Below, in pieces: positions 7,913 to 53,600 of a stretch of 64,000 nucleotides of DNA. The DNA lies in the NCBI GenBank assembly GCA_037379345.1, contig CM074513.1, positions 35,956,885 to 36,020,884 on the forward strand, given 5' to 3'. The notes beneath the pieces are model-generated. The model was not told where the DNA came from and made no database searches. It saw only the letters and a list, made by a program, of their open reading frames with translations. This DNA is from Perna viridis. Lineage: Eukaryota. A program made the translations under genes and the position numbers. Position 1 is the first letter of the stretch. Each line of letters opens with the position of its first letter.

Positions 7913-10900
7913 TCAATTCGCGGCAGGAGTGGGTTGGAACGATGAGTCAAATTTATTCCAGTTATAGTATGGATATTGTGGTGCAAAACTGTCACTGGAA
8001 TAGTCTGCTTGATCGGCTGGCTGAACAACATTTGGTGCCCCTTGCTGTCCGTTTGGTGCTGGAGGATACATAGCAGTTGAAAATGAAGTAAAAGACGGTT
8101 GGGCTAAAATGAAAAAAACATGACACGATATAAAAACAGTGCTAAAAATTATGTTCGATTCCCGTCTTACATCCGGGACGTTATAAATAATCAAAAACAA
8201 AACATGGGTAACAATTGAGAAAATAACGGTTGCTGATCAGTCAAGTTGCTTGTTTGACTGAAATGTGGATGGGAGTCCGTACAAGACACGGGATGACAGC
8301 TCTTAAAATTGGGCACACATGAACAATAGAAAACGTAAAGAAGTCAGAAATGTCATTATTTATACTTTGGTGCTGGAGGATACATAGCAGTTGAAAATGA
8401 AGTAAAAGATGGTTGGGCTAAAATAAAAACAAAACAAGATATGAATACACTGCTGACGGTATGAATAATCAAAAACTAAACATAGGTAACAGCTGAGAAA
8501 ATAACGGTTGCTAATTGGTCAAATCGCTTGTTGTGCTAAAATTTGGATGGGAGTCCGTTCGAGACACGGGATGGCGACTCTTAAATTAGGCACACATAAA
8601 CAACAGGAAAAGAAAAGAAGTCAAAAATATTATTATTTATGCTTAGAGGAGAAGGTAAATTAAAAAGACATAATTATCTTGTGTATATTTTCGATATTTT
8701 CGATGATAAAACCTAAAACAAATGTTACGGAGACATACGGAGTCGATCGAATATCACAAGGAAACAATATTTCGCGGGTTTGTTTCTACATTGGACGCCT
8801 GTAAATACAAATAAATAAGAAAGATCCTACTACGTTAGCCTTCATAATACCAATAGTTTCGTTATGAAAAAATGAATAGTTTTATTCTCGATATTCTAGA
8901 TAAAGCTTAGAGACCGATAAATTTTTAGGAAAGCTACTACTTGTCTCCTATATCAATAGCAAAATAAAACGTCGTCAAAACTTTAAAAGTAGTGTGTACA
9001 GAAGATGTTTGCATTTATGCCTTTGTCGGTTTTCCTTGTGCGTTAAAATGATTTTGGCTTACCACTAGAATGGATAAGGTAATCAATCGGGATTTAATTT
9101 GTTTAGTGGATCCGAAGTCGTCCTTTTTGTTTAAGGCATTTAAAGTCTTGCAGTGTCTCAGTTAATTATGTAATAGCCATTAGTTTTTACTCGTGTAAAA
9201 TAAAATTTTGAGGGTAAACGTGAGACTGTACTTTATTGTAGGGGCGTTGTCATATTTCCAACGCGTCTTGTTTTATAATATAATCCTCTTTTTTGTATCT
9301 TGCTAGAATTCTAACAAATAGGCTTCTGGAACAGGGTTATGTTGCTACAAGATTGAATGATTAATTCAATGTGTCATAGTTTTCCTTTCCTCGTTTGTCA
9401 ACCCCGGACTTGACTTTTATGAGCAACTCGGCGGGTATTTCTAGAAAAGCAGAGGACGCTTACCCTACCGGTGCACCTGATCTATGCTCCCAGTTTTTAG
9501 TGGAGTCCGAGTTGCTCATTCATGCTTTTGTTACTTTGTATGTATGATTATAGTTACTTTATATTCTTTGTTTTGTATGTCTGTTTTCCATGTCTGGTCT
9601 TTGTTCCTCGATTACATTCTTTTGATTACCGCTATAACCTTGGTTCCCTTGATTATTCTTTGTTTTACCGTACCGTTATATATAAAAACGAAATGATTTC
9701 TTTACCATCTACGCACAGTGAATTGTGTGTATTTGCTCTTGTTTAACATTTTAATCTGGCAATTCTATGTTCTAAGCGATTTTTTTGTCGAGATTGTAGT
9801 ATTTACAGGGCAATACATTGAGAGTTGATGTTTTTTTTATAAAATTAAACTGATTTGATTTTTTCATGCAAATTTACAAGACACAGATTTAATTATACTG
9901 CATCTACAATTCATGTTACATGATGGCGCATTGTAAAATACTTACGAACATTAGCAGGAAGTGACAGACCAGACAACATAGTCCCACCTCCTGAACTCGG
10001 TGCACCGTATTGTTGAGCAGACGATACAAGAGGAATACCTCCTATCATTACCGGAATGGCGACTCGAAGATTTATAGCTGGTCCCGAAGGATCCATTACA
10101 AACTGAAAAGTTACAGAATGTTAAAAAGACTTGTCGGAAATGCATCCATAAAACGACACAAGACATTTATTTTGTCTTTGCAATTTAATTCTCATATTGG
10201 TATATGAATATCCCTAAAAACTCGATTTGTACTTGTGATAAAATTTATCATATATATAACAATCTGCATGAATTGAATTAAGACAAAAATAAAAGGAACT
10301 AAAAAAGTTTATTATTAAGAACATAACACACCTCCATATTCCAAAATTTCGAAATAAAGACGGGCCATAAATGCAATACAAACTATGTATAACCAAAGTG
10401 TTCATGTTTCTTATTGTCCAAAGCAATGTTTTATTATTTAAATAGAAATCAACGCCCGAAACATAAGCAATGACTGACATAACTAGCGAAAATAGTCTAA
10501 ACACGAAAATGACTCTAAATTAAATCTCGTCAATCGGGGAAATAAATGTATCATTCACATTTTATAAAACTATAATATAATTCCTGATATTATGAAAATA
10601 AAAATGTTCCATTGTGTTGTAAAAAGAAAGTTTTTTTTTTAAATTGATAGCAGCGATAAAATTGGTAATTCTTATTTTACATTGCAAGATTAACTCTCTC
10701 ATGAATCTTACCTGCCAAAAATACTGGATGTCTATTATATTACAACCAACCAACCCAGAACCCGGTAAAGGAGGGACAATAATCTGTTCTCCGTCCCAGT
10801 AATCCGAGTCTCCTTTACCTATCTTCCGTTTCGTTGTCTGTGCTACTATAGTGGAAACTGTTCTGGTTTTTCTAGAAGTTATGTATCGGACTCTCTGAAG

Positions 10901-18879: not shown

Positions 18880-19425
18880 TGTCTAACTGTAAAACACAGA
18901 TTTGATTTTGCATTCATTTTGGATATTTGTTTGAAAGAGTAATCAAGGTAATAAGATTCTAGCGGAAATCAAAAGAATGTATTCCAGGGATAAATACTAG
19001 ACATGGAAAACTGAAATACACAACAAAGAATATAGAATAATCAAAATAATACATACAAAGTAACACAAGTAAATGAGCAACTTGGGCTCCACTAAAAACT
19101 GGGAGCATGGACCAGGTACGCCGGTAGGGTAAGTATTGTGTCAACTGTAAACACAAATTAAATTCTGTCATGTCTTGTTTGTGATTGTGGTACTCTGTGT
19201 TCACTGTAAAACAGTGATTTGATTTTGACACCCTGTGTTAACTGTAAAACAGGGATTTAATTGTGGTACTCTGTGTTCACTGTAAAACAGGGATTTGATT
19301 TCGACACTCTGTGTTCACTGTAAAACAGGGATTTGATTTCGACACTGTGTTCACTGTAAAACAGGGATTTGATTTTGACACTCTGTGTTCACTGTAAAAC
19401 ACGGAGATTTGATTTTGACACTCTA
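18880..19425. repeat. ~36-38 bp minisatellite interrupted by a PLE family 1 insertion
   Basis: Unit ACTCTGTGTTCACTGTAAAACAGGGATTTGATTTYGAC, about 7 copies at 19140-19425 plus one degenerate copy at 18880-18912. Confidence 0.85.
18933..19133 (-). mobile_element. PLE family 1 3' fragment, truncated inside the RNA structure
   Basis: The minus strand begins CTTACCCTACCGGCGTACCTGGTCC and runs to the common terminus GATTACTCTTTC. Confidence 0.9.
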
Positions 19426-19932: not shown

Positions 19933-20766
19933 GAAAGAGTAATCAAGGGGACCAAGGTTATAGCGGTAATCAAAAGAATGTAATCCAGGGACAAAGACCA
20001 GACATGGAAAACAGACATACACAACAAAGAACATATAGTAACTAAAATCATACATACGAAGTAACAACAGCAAATGAGAAACTCGGACTCCACTGAAAAC
20101 TGGGAGCATGGACCAGGTACACCGGTAGGGTAAGCGTCCTCTGCTTTTCTAGAAACACCCGCCGAGTTGCTCATAAAAAGTGAAGTCCGGGGTAGACAAA
20201 CGAGGAAAGGAAAACTATGACTCGTTGAATAAATCAGTTTTCATGGTGCAGATGGATACACCATAACGATCCACGAGTTCATGATGATGACCATAAAACT
20301 TCTGTAGTGATGACATCAATCTTGTAGCAACATAACCCTGTTCCAGAAGCCTATTTGTTAGAATTCTAGCGCGATACAAAAAGTCTGCGTAGTTTCGGCA
20401 AGCTCTGGCATAACGTATGAGTTGTGATATGAACACTCCATACGCAGGTGCTGAAGGGATGTTGCCACAGAGGAAAGGAAAGTTGACAATTCTGAATGAA
20501 AAGTCATCACGTTTGTCGTAAAGTTTGGTGAATAGTTTTCCTTTACCATCGATTTCTAAGTGAAGGTCAAGATATGAGGCTGACTTCACGGTATCTGTAG
20601 TATCCTTTATCTCAAGTTCTTTGGGGTAGATGCGATGTATCAAATCCCCGAAATTAGGATTGTTTAAAGATAATACGATCATCTATATAGCGGAAACTGA
20701 GACTAAAGGATCTAGCTGAACGATATTCTTTCTTTCGGATCAGATCAGCTATAAAGTCAGCCTCAA
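19933..20766 (-). mobile_element. PLE family 1 (Naiad-like), longest copy: RT catalytic motif, thumb and 3' UTR
   Basis: EADFIADL..SFRYIDD(+1)VLSLNNPNF..IYPKELEIKDTTD..ASYLDL..LYDKRDDFSF.IVNFPFLCGNIPSAPAYGVFISQLIRYARAC..QGY..L..SLQKFYG.H. Stop at 20215 with no downstream GIY-YIG domain. Confidence 0.92.
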
Positions 20767-23700: not shown

Positions 23701-25849
23701 CAACATGTACATGTGTCAATTAACGGTGTTTGCGTCTTCCTGGTATGTGTTTTTAGGTCATTTGATGATAAACTACATGTTTGTACATCTTCGTCTTGTA
23801 ACGTGCGAGTATGTGATGGAAGAGCTGATTATACCGATTCGAGCGATTTTTCATCGAATACGAACAGACAAACGACAAAACCAACACATGTCTCTCACCA
23901 TTCTCTTAGTTGAGTGGAATAGGGCCAGTTCTATTGTATTTTATATGTGGTATTCCTTTCTTGTTTCCCAAGCTTTAAATACGTTATAACTACTGTGATT
24001 ATTGTCTGGATTTCACTCCCGTATGTTAAATGATATTTTAATAAGAGTCTATCATTGCTGCAAAATGTCAGTTGAATACGGAATGTAGGTAATGAATCCA
24101 TGTTTGATAGGCTTAGTGTTCATTTAGGTATACATTTTTTTTAAGTAGGACAAAATAAGAAATAAAGCTAGATGATTCTTTGTTGTAGTTGTGTCGCCTC
24201 ACGTCCCTGTACCCTATTTGTAATTATTGTCAGTGTTTGTTTGAAAAAAAAACTGATTTTCCGCTAACTTCCAATAAAACGTAAGAACCACAATGGACAA
24301 ACACTGAATTCTGACCATTTTGTTGTATTGACTGAAATGCTAGAATGCCGATATTGTCTGTTATTACATCTCGTGATCAATGTCATTATTGAATTTCTGA
24401 ATTAAACAGATGTGGTTCTTTGTTTTATGGTACTTTATTTTCAGATTGTTACAGTTAGTAGAAAGTGTATAGTGGATAGAAAAATGCAAAGAAGTCTCTA
24501 AAAAGTGTCTCATTGACAATCCACTATTGATTTACTGTCATATGTATAATAGTGTTAAAAATAAATTTCACGAGTATTAATTTTTGCGGTTTTCTAACCA
24601 CCGTGAAAATAGCGAAAATTAATACCTTTAAAGTATATTTACGAACAAGAAGAAATCGCGGAAAATGAATCGGCGCGAATATGGAAAAGACAGAACGTAA
24701 GTCGTGATTTAGCAGCGAAATTCAAATAAAGTCCCGAGGGTAGATTAATAATATAACTGGAGGTTTCAACATGATCTCTATTTTGTCGCTGTGTCATGTA
24801 AATGCGTTGCTTAATTAGGACTTTAACTATTGTTATCTATCGAGAATAAAAAAAAAGTGAGCCATTAGCTCGAATCTTATCTTCCTCAGAGATCCCGACT
24901 TAGATCACGCATTTGAACGAAACCAGGTGAACTTGATCAAAAAGGAAGAATCTCTTTCATCAGGTGCAATTAATTAGTTATTATCAAAATCGGTTTCAAA
25001 ACTGATATGTATTACATAATGACTTACAGACTGGGAGGAATTCTTGGTAGATATCACCCTTCAGATGCAGTTCTTGAGATAAACTTTTCACAAACCAAAG
25101 CCCAGAGGATACAGCTACTTAACACCAGTAAATCTCTCATTTTATATTTTGGTTACAGTAATGTAGTACAGTTTGCAGCTTGTTCATGGCAACAAAAAAA
25201 AACATACGCCTTTACACTGATCAATAATCAATTGTTATTATCATGTTTTCTAGTCATGTTTGTAAGAACTCCAACTTAGTTTTCATATTTGTTTTATATT
25301 TGGATGAAAAGAAAAAAACATACCAAACAGACATACTCAGCATAAAGATTCATTTCTACCCGACACTATTACCACTAAAACAAAATTACATATACATAGC
25401 ACACAAAATAACCAAGGTTGGCGATCAAAGCTTTTTTTGACATTCCACTCAAAAACAAAATTAGTAATACCCTCGTTGATAATATGTTTTTGAGTGGAAT
25501 GAAGAGAACATTTTTTGATGAAATCAAGTATTTAGGAGTATTTGCATAACCGAGAAAGACTGTTCTTCATTTGTATACACAAACTTGTTTTTGAACAGAT
25601 ACACATAGCAGTGACAATTGTCTGTCCTCTAAAATTAAAAAAATAAATATCAAAATCCGTGCATCGCTGATCTTTTGCCTTTATTCGTAACATAAACTAC
25701 ACAGTTATCCATACAAGCAACAATATATGACTAAATTGTCCATGTGAACACCATTTTTTTTCGAATCTTTCCATCAATGCTTAGCACTGTCAAAACTGGC
25801 GTTTAGAGGAAAAACAAACTAGAGGTCATGAAATGAAAATGGAACGAAA

Positions 25850-26310
25850 AATGCAACAATTATTTGGTGTTACTGTCTCCATTTCTATGCAGCAACAAAT
25901 TATTTGGTATTCTAAGCAGAACACATTATTTGGTGTTCTAAACAGCAACACATTATTCGGTGCTCGAAGCAGCAACAGATTATTTGGTGTTCAAACAGCA
26001 ACACATTATTTGATGTTCTAAGCAGCAACAATTTATTCGGTGTTCTAAGCAGCAACAATTTATTTTTTGTTCTATGCAGCAACACATTATTTGGTGTTCA
26101 AACAGCAACACATTATTTGGTGTTCTAAACAGCAACACATTATTCGGTGCTCGAAGCAGCAACAGATTATTCGGTGTTCTGAGCAGCAACAATTTATTTG
26201 GTGCTCTATGCAGCTACACATTATTTGGTGTTCAAACAGCAACAAATTATTCGGTGTTCTAAACAGCAACAATTTATTCGGTGATCTAAGCAGCAAACAA
26301 TGATTTGGTG
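25850..26310. repeat. 26-27 bp minisatellite, about 16 copies
   Basis: Unit AGCAACACATTATTTGGTGTTCTAAAC. It produces the overlapping repetitive ORFs at 25833-26320. Confidence 0.95.
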
Positions 26311-26935
26311 TTGTCGCCATTTATTACTTATTATTTAAAGTTTCTGTCTTAATTCTCTGTGTTTTACTGTCTCCATTTTCTGTCGGTTGTTTGTTCTTAC
26401 TGTCTCCATTTATATTTGTTATGTAATGTTTCTGTCGCTATTCTCCTTGTGTTATTTGGTTTTACTCTCGGACTGTACATTTTCTGCGTTTTATACCTTC
26501 ATCTTCTGAATGTTTTTTAGTGTTAATATCTCCATTTTTGTGTGTTGTTTAATGTTATTGTCTCTATTATTTGGTGTTGCAGTCTACATTTTCTATGTTT
26601 TTTATGGTTTTAAAATCTCCATTTTATATGTATTATTTGGTGTTAATATTTCTCCATTTTCTATGTACTGTTTTCTGTAAAAATATATCCATTTTCTATG
26701 TGTTATTTAGTGTTACTGTCTACATTTTCTATGAGTTGTTTGGTGGTAATATCTCTCTATTTTTTGTGCGTTATTTGATGTTAATATCTCCTTTTCTGTG
26801 TGTTGTTCGGTGTTAATTTCTCACTATTTTCTATGCGTTGTTTGGTAGTAATATCTCTCCATCTTCTGTGTGTTATTTGGTGTTACCGTCTACATTTTAT
26901 ATTTGTTGTTTGTTGTTAATATCCCCATTTTCTTA
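26300..26935. repeat. Degenerate ~33 bp minisatellite
   Basis: Unit approximately TTATTTGGTGTTAMTRTCTCCATTTTCTATGTG. Confidence 0.85.
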
Positions 26936-38488: not shown

Positions 38489-39052
38489 AATGACTTTTCA
38501 TTCACTTTCCTTTCATCGGTGGCAATATCCCTTCAGCACCTGCGTATGGAGTGTTCATATCACAATTCATACGTTATGCCAGAGCTTGCCGAGACTACGC
38601 AGACTTTTTGTATTGCGCTAGAATTCTAACAAAAAGGCTTCTGAAGCAGGGTTATGTTGCTACAAGATCGAGGTCATCACTACAGAAGTTTTATGGCCGT
38701 CATCATGAACTCGTGGATCGTTACGGTGTATCCATCTGCGCCATGAAAACTGATTTGTTCAACGTGTCATAGTTTTCCTTTCCTCTTTCGTCTACCCCGG
38801 ACTTCACTTTTTATGAGCAACTCGGCGGGTGTTTCTAGAAAAGCAGAGGACGCTTACCCTACCGGTGCACCTGGTCCATACTCCCAGTTTTTAGTGGAAT
38901 CCGAGTTTCTCATTTGCTTTTGTTATTTTGTATATATGATTTTGGTTACTCTATGTTCTTTGTTGTGTATGTTTGTTTTCCATCTCCGGTCTTTGTCCCT
39001 GGATTACATTCTTTTGATTACCGCTATAACCTTGGTTCCCTTGATTACTCTT
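38489..39052 (+). mobile_element. PLE family 1 3' fragment (RT thumb and UTR)
   Basis: GNIPSAPAYGVFISQFIRYARACRDYADFL..QGYVATRSRSSLQKFYGRHHELVDRYG, stop at 38772, structure at 38813-38913. Confidence 0.92.
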
Positions 39053-50600: not shown

Positions 50601-53600
50601 AAAGATGTTTATCCTCCACTCATTTTCTTCAGTACAATGTATGTTATAAATTGTAATGTCAATGTACACATGAAGACTGAATACTGGAAAAAATGAATTG
50701 TCTTATGAATTTCAAAAGTAGACAAAGAGTGGGTGTATACATCCATGTACATGTATCAATATATAATATCATTTATTGCTAAAAAAATCTAAATGTCATT
50801 GCTTTTTAAGATATTTCACAACTTATCAATTTAAAACATTCAGATTCAAAAACTTACATGCATGTGTTCAAAATGCTCAAATCAATCTCAGCCCATGGTA
50901 TATGAAGTTCCATGGGTAAGAATTGTTGGAACTTACGAATTTTATTCTTACATTGTAGATCCCTGTTAACTTTTAAAAAATACATGTACATGTATGCACT
51001 AAGACACACATGAAATAAAAAATAAGATTATGTTACATGTAAGGTAGTGTATCTAGGACCGTCAAGTAATATAAAAAAAAATCATAACATCTTAACCCAG
51101 GATGTTAAAAAACTAAAAATCAAAGCAAAAACAAAACATTGATACTACACAAAAGGTTAACACCTTCATCTAGTGTGTAGTAAGTGTATAATATGTGTGT
51201 GTTAAAATCTCTGGCAAGGCTGTGTAGTTTAATTTTACAGATTGCTAGATTTATGTTCATTAAACATTTTATACCCATTAATGTATTTTAAACTTTGGAG
51301 AGTAGTGTACTAAGTTAATCCTAATATAACTGAATTTTACAATGTGTAGAGGTAAACAAAGACATGAAAATCCATTCATCTTGTGTTTGACCTAGAAAAT
51401 GGATGTTTATCATATCAACACTAACTTATCCAGAGATTTTGTTTGAATAAGAAATATAACAGTGATCTAAAACTTAATATAAGAATATTGATGTGAGTTC
51501 ATGTGTGTACATATGGTCATTGAAAAAGTATTTTATTAAAATTGGTTTTAAACCAATTATGGAAATCAGTCACTCCTAGTGAATATTTCATGTACTATCT
51601 ACAAACTTCACTGTACATACAATGTTGCTTTAGATGTTGGGTAGAATTGTGTTATTTGGAAAATAAAAAACTAAAAAGACATAAGATGTACATGTTCATT
51701 AAATGTACACGAGTAATGGTACAGTACCTGTACTTTCCCATCTATTACATGTATATTGTACATTTGTACATCAAGTACACATACTTCATTGTACATGTAC
51801 ATTTGTACATGCAAAAATATACAAAAAAGCATCTTAAGTCTTTTTTTTTTTTATATTTTTAGTTTTTGTAATAAACATATTCAGGATGAAACAAATATGG
51901 CATGAACAAACGTAATGGTTGACATCTCGTATTTTCAAAATCTTTAATTGTTGTTTAAACTTTGTTTTCTGAGTTGATACATGTACAATGTACATGTACA
52001 TATTTTTACATGACTACAAATGTTTACATATACAAAGTCATTAAGAGAAATGGTAAAATTAGTCTAACCAGAAATTACTACATATATTCTTGTAAGGTTG
52101 AGAATCTCACTGAGAACACTAAGTTTAAGCTGCATGGTTCTAATAAGACAACAAAACTTTTTTCATGTCTTGCGATATTCTGGATATACTAATCATCTGC
52201 TTTGGGCACTGAGTTCAATATTATGAGCTGGATATAATGTGTGGCTTTGATTTTTAAAAATAATACACTGGTATAGTGCATGTAAAATGTTGAATATAAT
52301 ACATACATGGCATACAATATACATATAAATGTTACACATGGTTCAAAACTTTGTTGTAAAATGTGTGCAACATGTTGAGCAACAATCGCTTTAAACCACC
52401 ATCAAATTCTAAACATGCTTCATTTCATAAGAAATTATTGTTTTCTAGTATGCTCTTTGTGGTAACTTAGCTCTTTTGCATTTTTTTTATGAAGGTGTAA
52501 CAGCTTTCACTTTCAGATAATTGTTTTCATTTGAAATGGAATAAATTCATAAGAAACTGTATAAAGAACCTAATTATACATGTATATGTCATGTAATATA
52601 CATTTTGTATGTACAGACTGTAGTATAAATCTGAAACATCTAATCAAATACTTCTTACATGGAGGCTAAAAAAAAATATGTGTGTTTCCTGTTACCCTAC
52701 ATACCCTAGTTTTCTGTGCCTACCCTGAACGTTTTATGGCCATTTTGGCTATAGTACTGTTAGTCTTGACTGTTTCCCCATTAACTCAATGTAAAGTGTT
52801 TTTAAAAAATAAAATAATTACCGGTGCACCTGGTCCATGCTCCCAGTTTTTAGTGGAGTCTGAGTTGCTCATTTACTTTTGTTACTTTGTATGTATGATT
52901 TTAGTTACTTTATGTTCTTTGTTGTGTATGTCTGTTTTCCATGTCTGGTCTTTGTACCTGGATTACATTCTTTTGATTACCGCTATAACCTTGGTTCCCT
53001 TGATAACTCCTTACTACCTACCCTATTTCGTTCATGTAGGTATCAGGAAACAAAACTACTAATTTGTTTTTTGCCATAACAAAAATAACAAGATATGATT
53101 ACCTTGCTTGTAGCAGTAGCTGCCTCACTTTTTATCACCCGATCATTTGTAACTTGAACTGTCAAATGTTTATTGTCTACAAGAGCCCAAGCACCCTCTA
53201 CTTTACAAGTCTGAAAGTCCTCATGAAACGTCCTCAAATGAGGATCACCAAATAATCCACACTGTTTATATTTCTGCTGTCCGCTAAATGAACACATCCT
53301 ATCATCTCTTGGTGGAAGAGGACCTACAACCTTCATTGTATCCTGATTAAACACTTTGGCTGCTGGGTCAGCTGAACAACGATGTCGACGCATGTTCTCT
53401 TTCAATCCAGCAATAATTCCATTATAAGTCAGATCAGATATGCAGTATCTTCTCTGCTTTGTTAAACAGTCTATATAAGTCCTGAGAGAAATACAATGTG
53501 GTTTTTCAGCTTGTTGTGCAGCTATAAGTGTCACTTTTACAGTCCCTTCCGCATCTTTTGCTGTACTAAATAAAGCTTGACAATGAGCAATATCACATGC

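What the first reader, a model, noticed from the sequence alone, without database searches (positions are those of the whole stretch)
38813..38913. A different, unclassified ~101-nt multi-junction RNA occupies the equivalent UTR position in PLE family 1
Seen in three full copies (9419-9519, 20074-20174 minus, 38813-38913), about 40 nt after the RT stop. It has a 13-bp outer stem AUGAGCAACUCGG/CCGAGUUGCUCAU (perfect in the 9419 copy, one mismatch in the other two). An inner stem CGGGUG/CACCUG encloses the palindrome UUUCUAGAAA, a small AGC..GCU hairpin, UACCCU and the palindrome ACCGGU. A side hairpin CUCC-CAGUUUUUAGU-GGAG follows. GGGUG can alternatively pair with UACCC, which would allow a switch or dimer. 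It is a GC-rich island in a U-rich UTR, and I recognise no hammerhead, HDV, twister, pistol or SECIS core in it. Inference: since family 2 carries a twister-like motif in its UTR, this is a candidate new self-cleaving RNA or an RT-recognition element analogous to a telomerase-RNA domain.
Basis: partly seen in the sequence, partly recalled or inferred. Interest (0 to 1): 0.8.

Follow-up and report, generated by a model that had tools for sequence, protein, structure and literature searches.

The report
Conserved folded RNA in Naiad retroelement tails
A roughly 100-base RNA fold just after the reverse-transcriptase gene of a very abundant Naiad-type Penelope-like jumping gene is real and kept by compensating mutations across many lineages; it matches no described RNA family and shows no sign of cutting itself, so it is most likely the handle by which these hammerhead-less elements are recognised, paired and copied.

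Summary
The 101-nt segment is at 38813-38913, 9419-9519 and 20074-20174(-), 40 nt after the RT stop, with the 13-bp outer stem as described. The element is a Naiad-type Penelope-like retroelement with thousands of ~95% identical copies.

The same module follows the RT gene in relatives down to about 57-60% C-terminal identity, in other assemblies and in an older family of this genome. It is absent in relatives at 49% or less.

On a 48-sequence MAFFT alignment, 89% of cells pair (34-48% when partners are slid) and 27 of 30 pairs show changes on both sides.

- **Palindromes:** the 10-nt one stays self-complementary through at least six different sequences, centre included, which points to pairing between two copies.
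- **Invariant blocks:** CGGGUG, AGCAG, GCUUACCCU and GCACCUG. GGGUG can only form a pseudoknot, and its partner is unresolved.

Rfam gives no match. RNA-seq shows smooth coverage with no pile-up of ends, which argues against efficient self-cleavage.

Best reading: a cis-acting RT-recognition and self-pairing module. Function is untested. This scan found the same module before on other pieces of this genome.

The parts
38551..38772 (+). C-terminal remnant of the Naiad reverse-transcriptase ORF, stop TAG at 38770-38772
   Evidence: 76% tblastn identity to the family's RT C-terminus
38813..38913 (+). the whole RNA module (copy given in the finding)
   Evidence: (101.8 bits)
38813..38825 (+). P1 5' strand (pairs with 38901-38913; 13 bp, one C.U mismatch in this copy)
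   Evidence: 12 of 13 pairs show changes on both sides across lineages
38826..38831 (+). invariant CGGGUG; can pair with UACCC (38855-38859) or CACCUG (38868-38873), in both cases crossing P3 as a pseudoknot
   Evidence: 95% column conservation; no covariation either way
38832..38841 (+). pal1, a 10-nt self-complementary segment UUUCUAGAAA
   Evidence: all 5 symmetric pairs covary, centre included
38842..38846 (+). invariant AGCAG
   Evidence: 99% conserved; partly forced by the search pattern
38847..38851 (+). P3 5' strand AGGAC, pairs with 38874-38879 GUCC(A)U (A38878 bulged)
   Evidence: found by RNAalifold; 5 of 5 pairs with changes on both sides
38852..38860 (+). invariant GCUUACCCU in the P3 loop
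   Evidence: 97% conserved; partly forced by the search pattern
38861..38866 (+). pal2, a 6-nt palindrome ACCGGU (UCCGGA in most other lineages)
   Evidence: outer pair UA:36 AU:6 CG:1 UG:2
38867..38873 (+). conserved GCACCUG
   Evidence: 92% conserved and not part of the search pattern
38874..38879 (+). P3 3' strand
38881..38899 (+). P4 hairpin CUCC / loop CAGUUUUUAGU / GGAA (GGAG in the family's common form)
   Evidence: CUCC/GGAG changes to CCCC/GGGG; pair CG:24 UA:17; U-rich loop conserved
38901..38913 (+). P1 3' strand
38914..39052 (+). U/G-rich 3' tail up to the element's 3' end
   Evidence: about 3,000 reads per run leave into unrelated AT-rich flanks at 39052; 38-nt tail duplications
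9419..9519 (+). second full copy of the module (perfect P1; GGGUA instead of GGGUG)
   Evidence: 108.4 bits
20074..20174 (-). third full copy of the module
   Evidence: 97.6 bits
52819..53009 (+). 5'-truncated copy that starts inside the module (equivalent to 38860) and keeps only its 3' half plus the tail
18953..19133 (-). 5'-truncated copy that starts inside the module (equivalent to 38853), 1 kb from the 20074 copy as a partial tandem

Best explanation
The segment is a cis-acting structured RNA module of one subclade of Naiad-type Penelope-like retroelements. It folds as a three-way junction. P1 closes it, P3 and P4 branch from it, and four invariant single-stranded blocks (CGGGUG, AGCAG, GCUUACCCU, GCACCUG) sit around the junction. 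GGGUG can form a pseudoknot with the P3 loop. Proposed mechanism (inferred, not shown): the invariant blocks and the junction are the surface that the element's telomerase-like RT binds on its own transcript. This would hold the RNA about 135-180 nt from its 3' end, so that target-primed reverse transcription starts on the right template. The two self-complementary segments, pal1 (10 nt) and pal2 (NCCGGN), would pair with the same segments of a second copy. That second copy is either a second RNA molecule or the copy carried by the upstream pseudo-LTR of the same transcript. Shown here: the fold's helices, their covariation, the invariance of the blocks, the self-complementarity of pal1 through many sequence changes, the restriction to one Naiad subclade, and the absence of a cleavage signature.
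For: **Structure.** On MAFFT alignments not fitted to any structure, 88-89% of cells pair against 34-50% for slid partners. 23 of 30 pairs (A1) and 27 of 30 (A2) have changes on both sides. The covariation score is 0.45-0.48 against at most 0.12. No shuffle out of 500 reaches the observed values.

**Variable helices, fixed blocks.** Helices are 69-82% conserved, while the unpaired blocks are 92-99% conserved.

**pal1.** It reads UUUCUAGAAA, UUUCAUGAAA, CCACUAGUGG/UCACUAGUGG, CCACAUGUGG, CCGUCGACGG and CCGCUGGCGG/CCACUGGUGG in different lineages. The central pair changes UA to AU twice independently, and also to CG and U.G. A hairpin cannot pair those central bases, so the pairing must be between two copies.

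**Strand.** G.U outnumbers A.C, 219:159 in P1 and 110:58 in pal1. Common U.G variants break the DNA palindrome but not an RNA duplex, which points to the sense-strand RNA.

**Position.** The distance to the element's 3' end is kept: 139 nt in this family, about 133 in L035, about 180 in family B. The distance to the stop is not: 40, about 50, and about 750-820 nt.

**Background.** Naiads lack the hammerhead that all other PLE clades carry in the terminal repeat (PMC8557442). Those hammerheads have palindromic helix III and are thought to work as dimers (PMC4209133).
Against: No binding, dimerisation or retrotransposition assay exists, so function is inferred from anatomy. Most sampled sequences were found with a pattern that fixed GGGUG, AGCAG, UACCCU and CCGG, which overstates the invariance of those bases; GCACCUG and C26 were free. 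Many rows are decayed copies from one metagenome organism, so the number of independent lineages is about six to eight, not 48. I found no non-autonomous element that keeps the module. The older family B, which at first looked like one, has decayed RT homology upstream. The pseudoknot partner of GGGUG is unresolved. Thermodynamic folding of the alignment prefers a nested alternative.
Confidence: 0.5

Rival explanations
1. It is a new class of self-cleaving ribozyme, perhaps active only as a dimer or in tandem transcripts, that replaces the hammerhead of other Penelope-like elements.
For: It sits in the terminal-repeat region where every other PLE clade carries a hammerhead (PMC8557442). Covarying helices around invariant junction bases with a possible pseudoknot are typical of small ribozymes. 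PLE hammerheads also carry palindromes, act as dimers and cleave poorly in vitro (PMC4209133).
Against: Raw RNA-seq reads (two runs, depth 1,000-2,000) cover the module without a dip, and no position has 20% or more of molecules starting or ending there. There is no match to any Rfam ribozyme model at E<=10 in three lineages. There is no CUGANGA...GAAA core, and the GAAA in this family's pal1 is not conserved.
Confidence: 0.12
2. It is an RNA element with another post-transcriptional role: stabilising or exporting a non-polyadenylated transcript, or promoting translation of the downstream ORF when it lies in the 5' UTR of a tandem copy.
For: The structure is on the sense RNA (G.U excess). The element ends without a poly(A) tail, since flanks begin directly at 39052. 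In partial tandems the module also lies upstream of the next ORF.
Against: This does not explain why pal1 must stay self-complementary through its centre. The kept distance is to the 3' end, not to either ORF boundary. No known stability or IRES family matches.
Confidence: 0.2
3. It acts at the DNA level, as a promoter or a binding site for a dimeric protein in the pseudo-LTR, and the palindromes are half-site pairs.
For: In Penelope and Chlamys the pseudo-LTR holds the promoter and transcription start (PMC8557442). TTCTAGAA and CACCTG resemble known transcription-factor sites (my own knowledge, not tested).
Against: The palindrome sequence changes freely while its complementarity is kept, the opposite of a protein site. 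Abundant U.G variants (UCACUAGUGG, CCGCUGGCGG) break the DNA symmetry. P1, P3 and P4 covary as RNA helices.
Confidence: 0.08
4. It has no function of its own. The similarity between copies reflects recent common descent, and the stems are chance.
For: Copies within this genome's family are about 95% identical, so they say nothing by themselves. Folding z-scores are weak.
Against: Lineages whose RT C-termini are only about 57-70% identical keep the module with many compensatory changes, while the flanks diverge.
Confidence: 0.03

Closest known systems
Hammerhead ribozymes in the pseudo-LTRs of canonical Penelope-like elements (Cervera and de la Pena 2014, PMC4209133)
   Same: Same kind of element and same place, the non-coding terminal repeat after the ORF. 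Both are small structured RNAs, carry a palindromic segment that implies pairing between two copies, and show extensive compensatory variation within genomes.
   Different: No CUGANGA/GAAA core, a different helix layout (P1/P3/P4 plus pseudoknot), no Rfam hammerhead hit at E<=10, and no cleavage signature in RNA-seq.
3' UTR recognition structures of site- or sequence-specific non-LTR retrotransposons (R2 3' UTR pseudoknotted fold; stem-loops of stringent L2-clade LINEs such as UnaL2); from my own knowledge
   Same: A conserved fold near the 3' end of the transcript, with structure kept and helix sequence free. The presumed role is to let the RT pick its own RNA for target-primed reverse transcription.
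   Different: No sequence or structural homology. The RT here is telomerase-like (PLE), not LINE-like. The module carries self-complementary segments and lies 135-180 nt from the end rather than at it.
Retroviral dimerisation initiation sites (for example the HIV-1 DIS palindromes GCGCGC/GUGCAC); from my own knowledge
   Same: A short palindrome whose sequence differs between lineages but always stays self-complementary. This is expected to give lineage-specific RNA-RNA pairing.
   Different: pal1 is 10 nt and is not shown to lie in a hairpin loop. There are two palindromes. No dimer has been demonstrated.
SECIS elements found 1-21 nt after the stop in selenoprotein-encoding Naiads (Craig et al. 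2021, PMC8557442)
   Same: A structured RNA directly downstream of the Naiad ORF. This family's P1 even begins with AUGA.
   Different: The 3' partner of AUGA is UCAU (Watson-Crick), so there is no G.A quartet. AUGA is not conserved (UAGA and ACUU in other lineages). There is no Rfam SECIS hit.
Telomerase RNA pseudoknot and three-way-junction (CR4/5) domains; from my own knowledge
   Same: The RT is the sister group of TERT. The module combines a three-way junction with a possible pseudoknot and invariant single-stranded bases.
   Different: No homology shown, no template function shown, and the pseudoknot has no covariation support.

Membership tests
Hammerhead ribozyme | Conserved core CUGANGA ... 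GAAA ... UH at a three-helix junction | tested here: not met
   No CUGA in 38813-38913. GAAA occurs only inside this family's pal1 and is absent in other lineages. No Rfam hammerhead hit at E<=10.
Twister, twister-sister, pistol, hatchet, HDV-like, hairpin, VS, hovlinc ribozymes | Match to the family covariance model | tested here: not met
   cmscan against Rfam 15 found nothing at gathering score in the window and nothing at E<=10 on the module in three lineages.
Any self-cleaving ribozyme | Site-specific cleavage of the transcript | tested here: inconclusive
   Raw RNA-seq shows smooth depth and no place where a fifth or more of molecules begin or end. This argues against efficient cleavage but cannot exclude weak or conditional activity.
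SECIS element | AUGA/GA non-Watson-Crick quartet at the base of helix II, with an apical AA motif | tested here: not met
   AUGA pairs with UCAU by Watson-Crick pairs and is not conserved across lineages. No SECIS hit.
Naiad clade of Penelope-like elements (host element) | GIY-YIG endonuclease N-terminal to a PLE-type RT in one ORF | tested here: met
   Contig L215 (80% identical C-terminus, carries the module) has GIY-YIG at aa 147-236 (E=0.0018, below Pfam's cut-off) upstream of the RT part. Relative P0160 shows the same layout. No full-length copy of the window's own family was examined.
Naiad clade of Penelope-like elements (host element) | No canonical hammerhead; 5' truncation, partial tandems, 30-40-nt tail extension, AT-rich targets | tested here: met
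   No hammerhead. Truncated and tandem copies are present. There are 38-nt 'goes back' joints at the 3' end and AT-rich flanks. These features are as listed in PMC8557442.
RT-recognition 3' UTR element (R2/LINE type, functional class) | Structure conserved by covariation near the transcript's 3' end | tested here: met
   The distance to the 3' end is 133-180 nt in three lineages.
RT-recognition 3' UTR element (R2/LINE type, functional class) | Specific binding by the element's RT and requirement in cis for retrotransposition | not testable with these tools
   Needs biochemistry or a retrotransposition assay.
Dimerisation (DIS-like) element | Self-complementary sequence kept through sequence change | tested here: met
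   pal1 has at least six sequence forms, all self-complementary, with 5 of 5 symmetric pairs changed on both sides. Predicted self-duplex energy is -9 to -18.9 kcal/mol.
Dimerisation (DIS-like) element | RNA dimer formation | not testable with these tools
   Needs native gels or SEC with pal1 mutants and compensatory pairs.

The most novel reading that the evidence does not exclude
The module is a previously unknown class of self-cleaving (or self-ligating) ribozyme that works only when two copies pair through the palindromes. It would be the Naiad counterpart of the dimeric hammerheads of other Penelope-like elements.
Probability: 0.1. Interest if true: 0.9.

Novelty: new variant of a known kind. 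Interest (0 to 1): 0.62.

Why it matters
Naiads are among the most abundant transposable elements of bivalves and other marine invertebrates. They are also the one animal PLE clade without the hammerhead ribozyme, and how they are recognised and copied is unknown. A conserved, covariation-supported RNA module with invariant junction bases and self-pairing palindromes gives a concrete, mutable target. It can be used to test how a telomerase-related RT chooses its template. It can also be used to test whether pairing between two terminal repeats, rather than cleavage, is the feature shared with hammerhead-bearing PLEs, and whether it underlies their odd tandem and inverted insertions. Finally, it is a candidate new Rfam family and a handy marker for annotating this Naiad subclade.

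Tried and rejected
- **Rfam.** Searched at gathering score (window) and at E<=10 (module in three lineages). Only chance snoRNA/miRNA hits below threshold appeared.
- **tRNA-like origin.** ARAGORN found nothing.
I put it in my first model. It has no covariation and 3-5 broken rows per inner pair, so I replaced it with P3.
- **Pseudoknot partner of GGGUG.** Both UACCC and CACCUG are invariant, so this is undecidable.
- **Mutual-information scan of 272 instances.** Dominated by lineage signal; it added only P3 and pal1.
- **Family B as a non-autonomous element.** This would have argued for a cis requirement. Rejected, because long copies have decayed RT homology upstream.
- **Telomere-template reading of UACCCU.** ACCCUA occurs only in this family; other lineages have ACCCUU. 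Not conserved, so dropped.
- **Conserved ORF starting at the AUG of P1.** Other lineages have no AUG there.
- **Literature.** No paper prints the core sequence or describes the motif. The supplements of PMC8557442 are not held, so named Naiad consensus sequences could not be checked.
- **Mid-range relatives.** Four of twelve contig look-ups returned no DNA, so the 50-56% identity range stays unsampled.

Full report
**Observation.** The 101-nt segment is present at 38813-38913 (+), 9419-9519 (+) and 20074-20174 (-). The reading frame upstream ends with TAG at 38770-38772, 40 nt before the segment. The 13-bp outer stem is perfect in the 9419 copy and has one C.U mismatch in the other two. The side hairpin reads GGAA instead of GGAG in the 38813 copy. 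RNA reads pooled from the whole family show G at 38899 and 38908, so the family's common form has both helices intact. Folding energy alone is not striking, with z = -1.5 and -2.6. Two further copies, 52819-53009 (+) and 18953-19133 (-), are 5'-truncated inside the module.

**Host element.**
- The upstream frame encodes the C-terminus of a Penelope-like RT (YIDD, then YLDL...LYDKRDDF...NFPF...KFYGRHHELVDRY; weak RVT_1).
- A contig with an 80% identical C-terminus and the same module (L215) has a GIY-YIG domain N-terminal to the RT part. This is the layout that defines Naiads (PMC8557442). I did not examine a full-length copy of the window's own family.
- The family is very abundant. The first look found 7,912 candidates for the 283-nt UTR, and the best are about 95% identical. 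All 150 scored covariance-model candidates in the genome were significant.
- Reads leave the element at 39052 into unrelated AT-rich flanks. 38-nt 'goes back' joints at the end match the 30-40-nt tail extension described for Naiads.

**Not a known RNA.** Rfam 15 gives nothing at gathering score in the whole window. At E<=10 on the module in three lineages it gives nothing relevant. ARAGORN finds no tRNA-like gene. There is no CUGANGA core. The AUGA at the foot of P1 pairs by Watson-Crick pairs with UCAU and is not conserved, so it is not a SECIS. No paper in the library prints the core sequence or describes such a motif. Craig et al. state that Naiads lack canonical hammerheads.

**Relatives.**
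- The RT C-terminus has 7,509 relatives in the protein collection.
- Contigs encoding relatives at 80%, 69% and 68% identity carry the same module 37-50 nt after their stop, with different helix sequences.
- The same kind of pattern found 310 places of non-family-1 type in this genome, against 0 for the reversed control. These include an older family B.
- A covariance model found 261 instances in 571 kb of those contigs.
- Relatives at 49% identity or less (L187-L190, and the window's own 'family 2') have no module. The 50-56% range could not be sampled because no DNA was served.
- The module therefore marks one Naiad subclade, down to about 57-60% C-terminal identity.

**Structure.**
- This helix reads GAACU/AGUUC, GACAU/AUGUC and GAUCU/AGAUC in other lineages.
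- With P1, P3, P4 and the two palindromes, 88.1% of cells pair on that alignment, against 38-50% for slid partners. 23 of 30 pairs have changes on both sides.
- On a 48-sequence MAFFT alignment the figures are 89.2% against 34-48%, 27 of 30 pairs, and a covariation score of 0.479 against at most 0.117. No shuffle out of 500 reaches the observed values.
- The rows are not 48 independent lineages. Many are decayed copies from one organism, and I count about six to eight distinct lineages.
- Helices are 69-82% conserved per column, whereas CGGGUG, AGCAG, GCUUACCCU and GCACCUG are 92-99% conserved. Part of that invariance was imposed by my search pattern; GCACCUG was not.
- GGGUG can pair with UACCC or with CACCUG. 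Either pairing crosses P3, so it would be a pseudoknot. Both partners are invariant, so covariation cannot decide between them.
- Thermodynamic folding of the alignment prefers the nested alternative, CGGGUG/CACCUG plus the small hairpin. A conformational switch is therefore possible but unproven.

**Palindromes.**
- pal1 reads UUUCUAGAAA here. Elsewhere it reads UUUCAUGAAA, CCACUAGUGG/UCACUAGUGG, CCACAUGUGG, CCGUCGACGG and CCGCUGGCGG/CCACUGGUGG.
- All five symmetric pairs change on both sides. The central pair flips UA to AU in two separate backgrounds.
- A hairpin cannot pair the central bases. The simplest reading is pairing between two copies of the module.
- Predicted self-duplexes have energies of -9 to -18.9 kcal/mol.
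- U.G variants are common (56 UG against 17 CA at the outer pair), and G.U exceeds A.C in P1 by 219:159. This fits an RNA duplex on the sense strand and not a DNA half-site pair.
- pal2 (NCCGGN) changes ACCGGU to UCCGGA, essentially one compensatory event, so the evidence for it is thinner.

**Function.**
- Raw RNA-seq reads of two runs cover the module at depth 1,000-2,000 on both mate orientations. Depth rises smoothly towards the 3' end, as expected from 5'-truncated copy numbers. No position has a fifth or more of molecules beginning or ending there. That argues against efficient self-cleavage, although weak or conditional activity cannot be excluded.
- The distance from the module to the element's 3' end is kept: 139 nt here, about 133 in L035, about 180 in family B.
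- The distance from the stop varies from 40 nt to about 0.75-0.8 kb in family B. This ties the module to the 3' end rather than to translation.
- Canonical PLE hammerheads at the equivalent place also carry palindromes, are thought to act as dimers and cleave poorly in vitro (PMC4209133).
- I therefore commit, at about 0.5, to a cis-acting RT-recognition and self-pairing module. The binding and pairing steps are inferences.

**Earlier notes and housekeeping.** This scan's earlier notes describe the same module on other pieces of this genome. My tests agree with them. They add the RNA-seq negative for cleavage, the rule that distance to the 3' end is kept, and the limit of the clade.

Noticed in passing
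That family's RT is only about 30-40% identical to family 1 over short pieces.
   Followed up: partly
window 38795-38806; same position in L035, L125 and L205: A short box UACC(C)CGGRYUU lies 12-25 nt 5' of P1 in all lineages. It repeats the UACCC..CCGG of the P3 loop and could be a second binding or pairing site.
   Followed up: no
window 39013-39052: RNA and contig joints 39050->39013 and 39052->39015 show 38-nt duplications of the element's end. This is the Naiad 'tail' extension. Flanks after 39052 are AT-rich.
   Followed up: partly
L191, L192, L194 (own genome, family B): An older Naiad family carries the module about 0.75-0.8 kb after its decayed RT C-terminus. The spacer (L186:930-1364) also occurs as a repeat on its own at many loci.
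   Followed up: partly
window 25840-26339: A minisatellite of about 27-nt units, 13 or more overlapping registers.
   Followed up: no
L187:3028-3230: A Naiad relative at 49% identity lacks the module. Its UTR instead has GUGCAC twice, plus CCUAGG and GAUCUAAGAUC. With a single sequence, significance cannot be judged.
   Followed up: no
L197 (G000:C14:31503652-31503769): One family-1 copy has pal1 UCUCUAGAGA, a double change that keeps the pairing. L199 has only one of the two changes.
   Followed up: no
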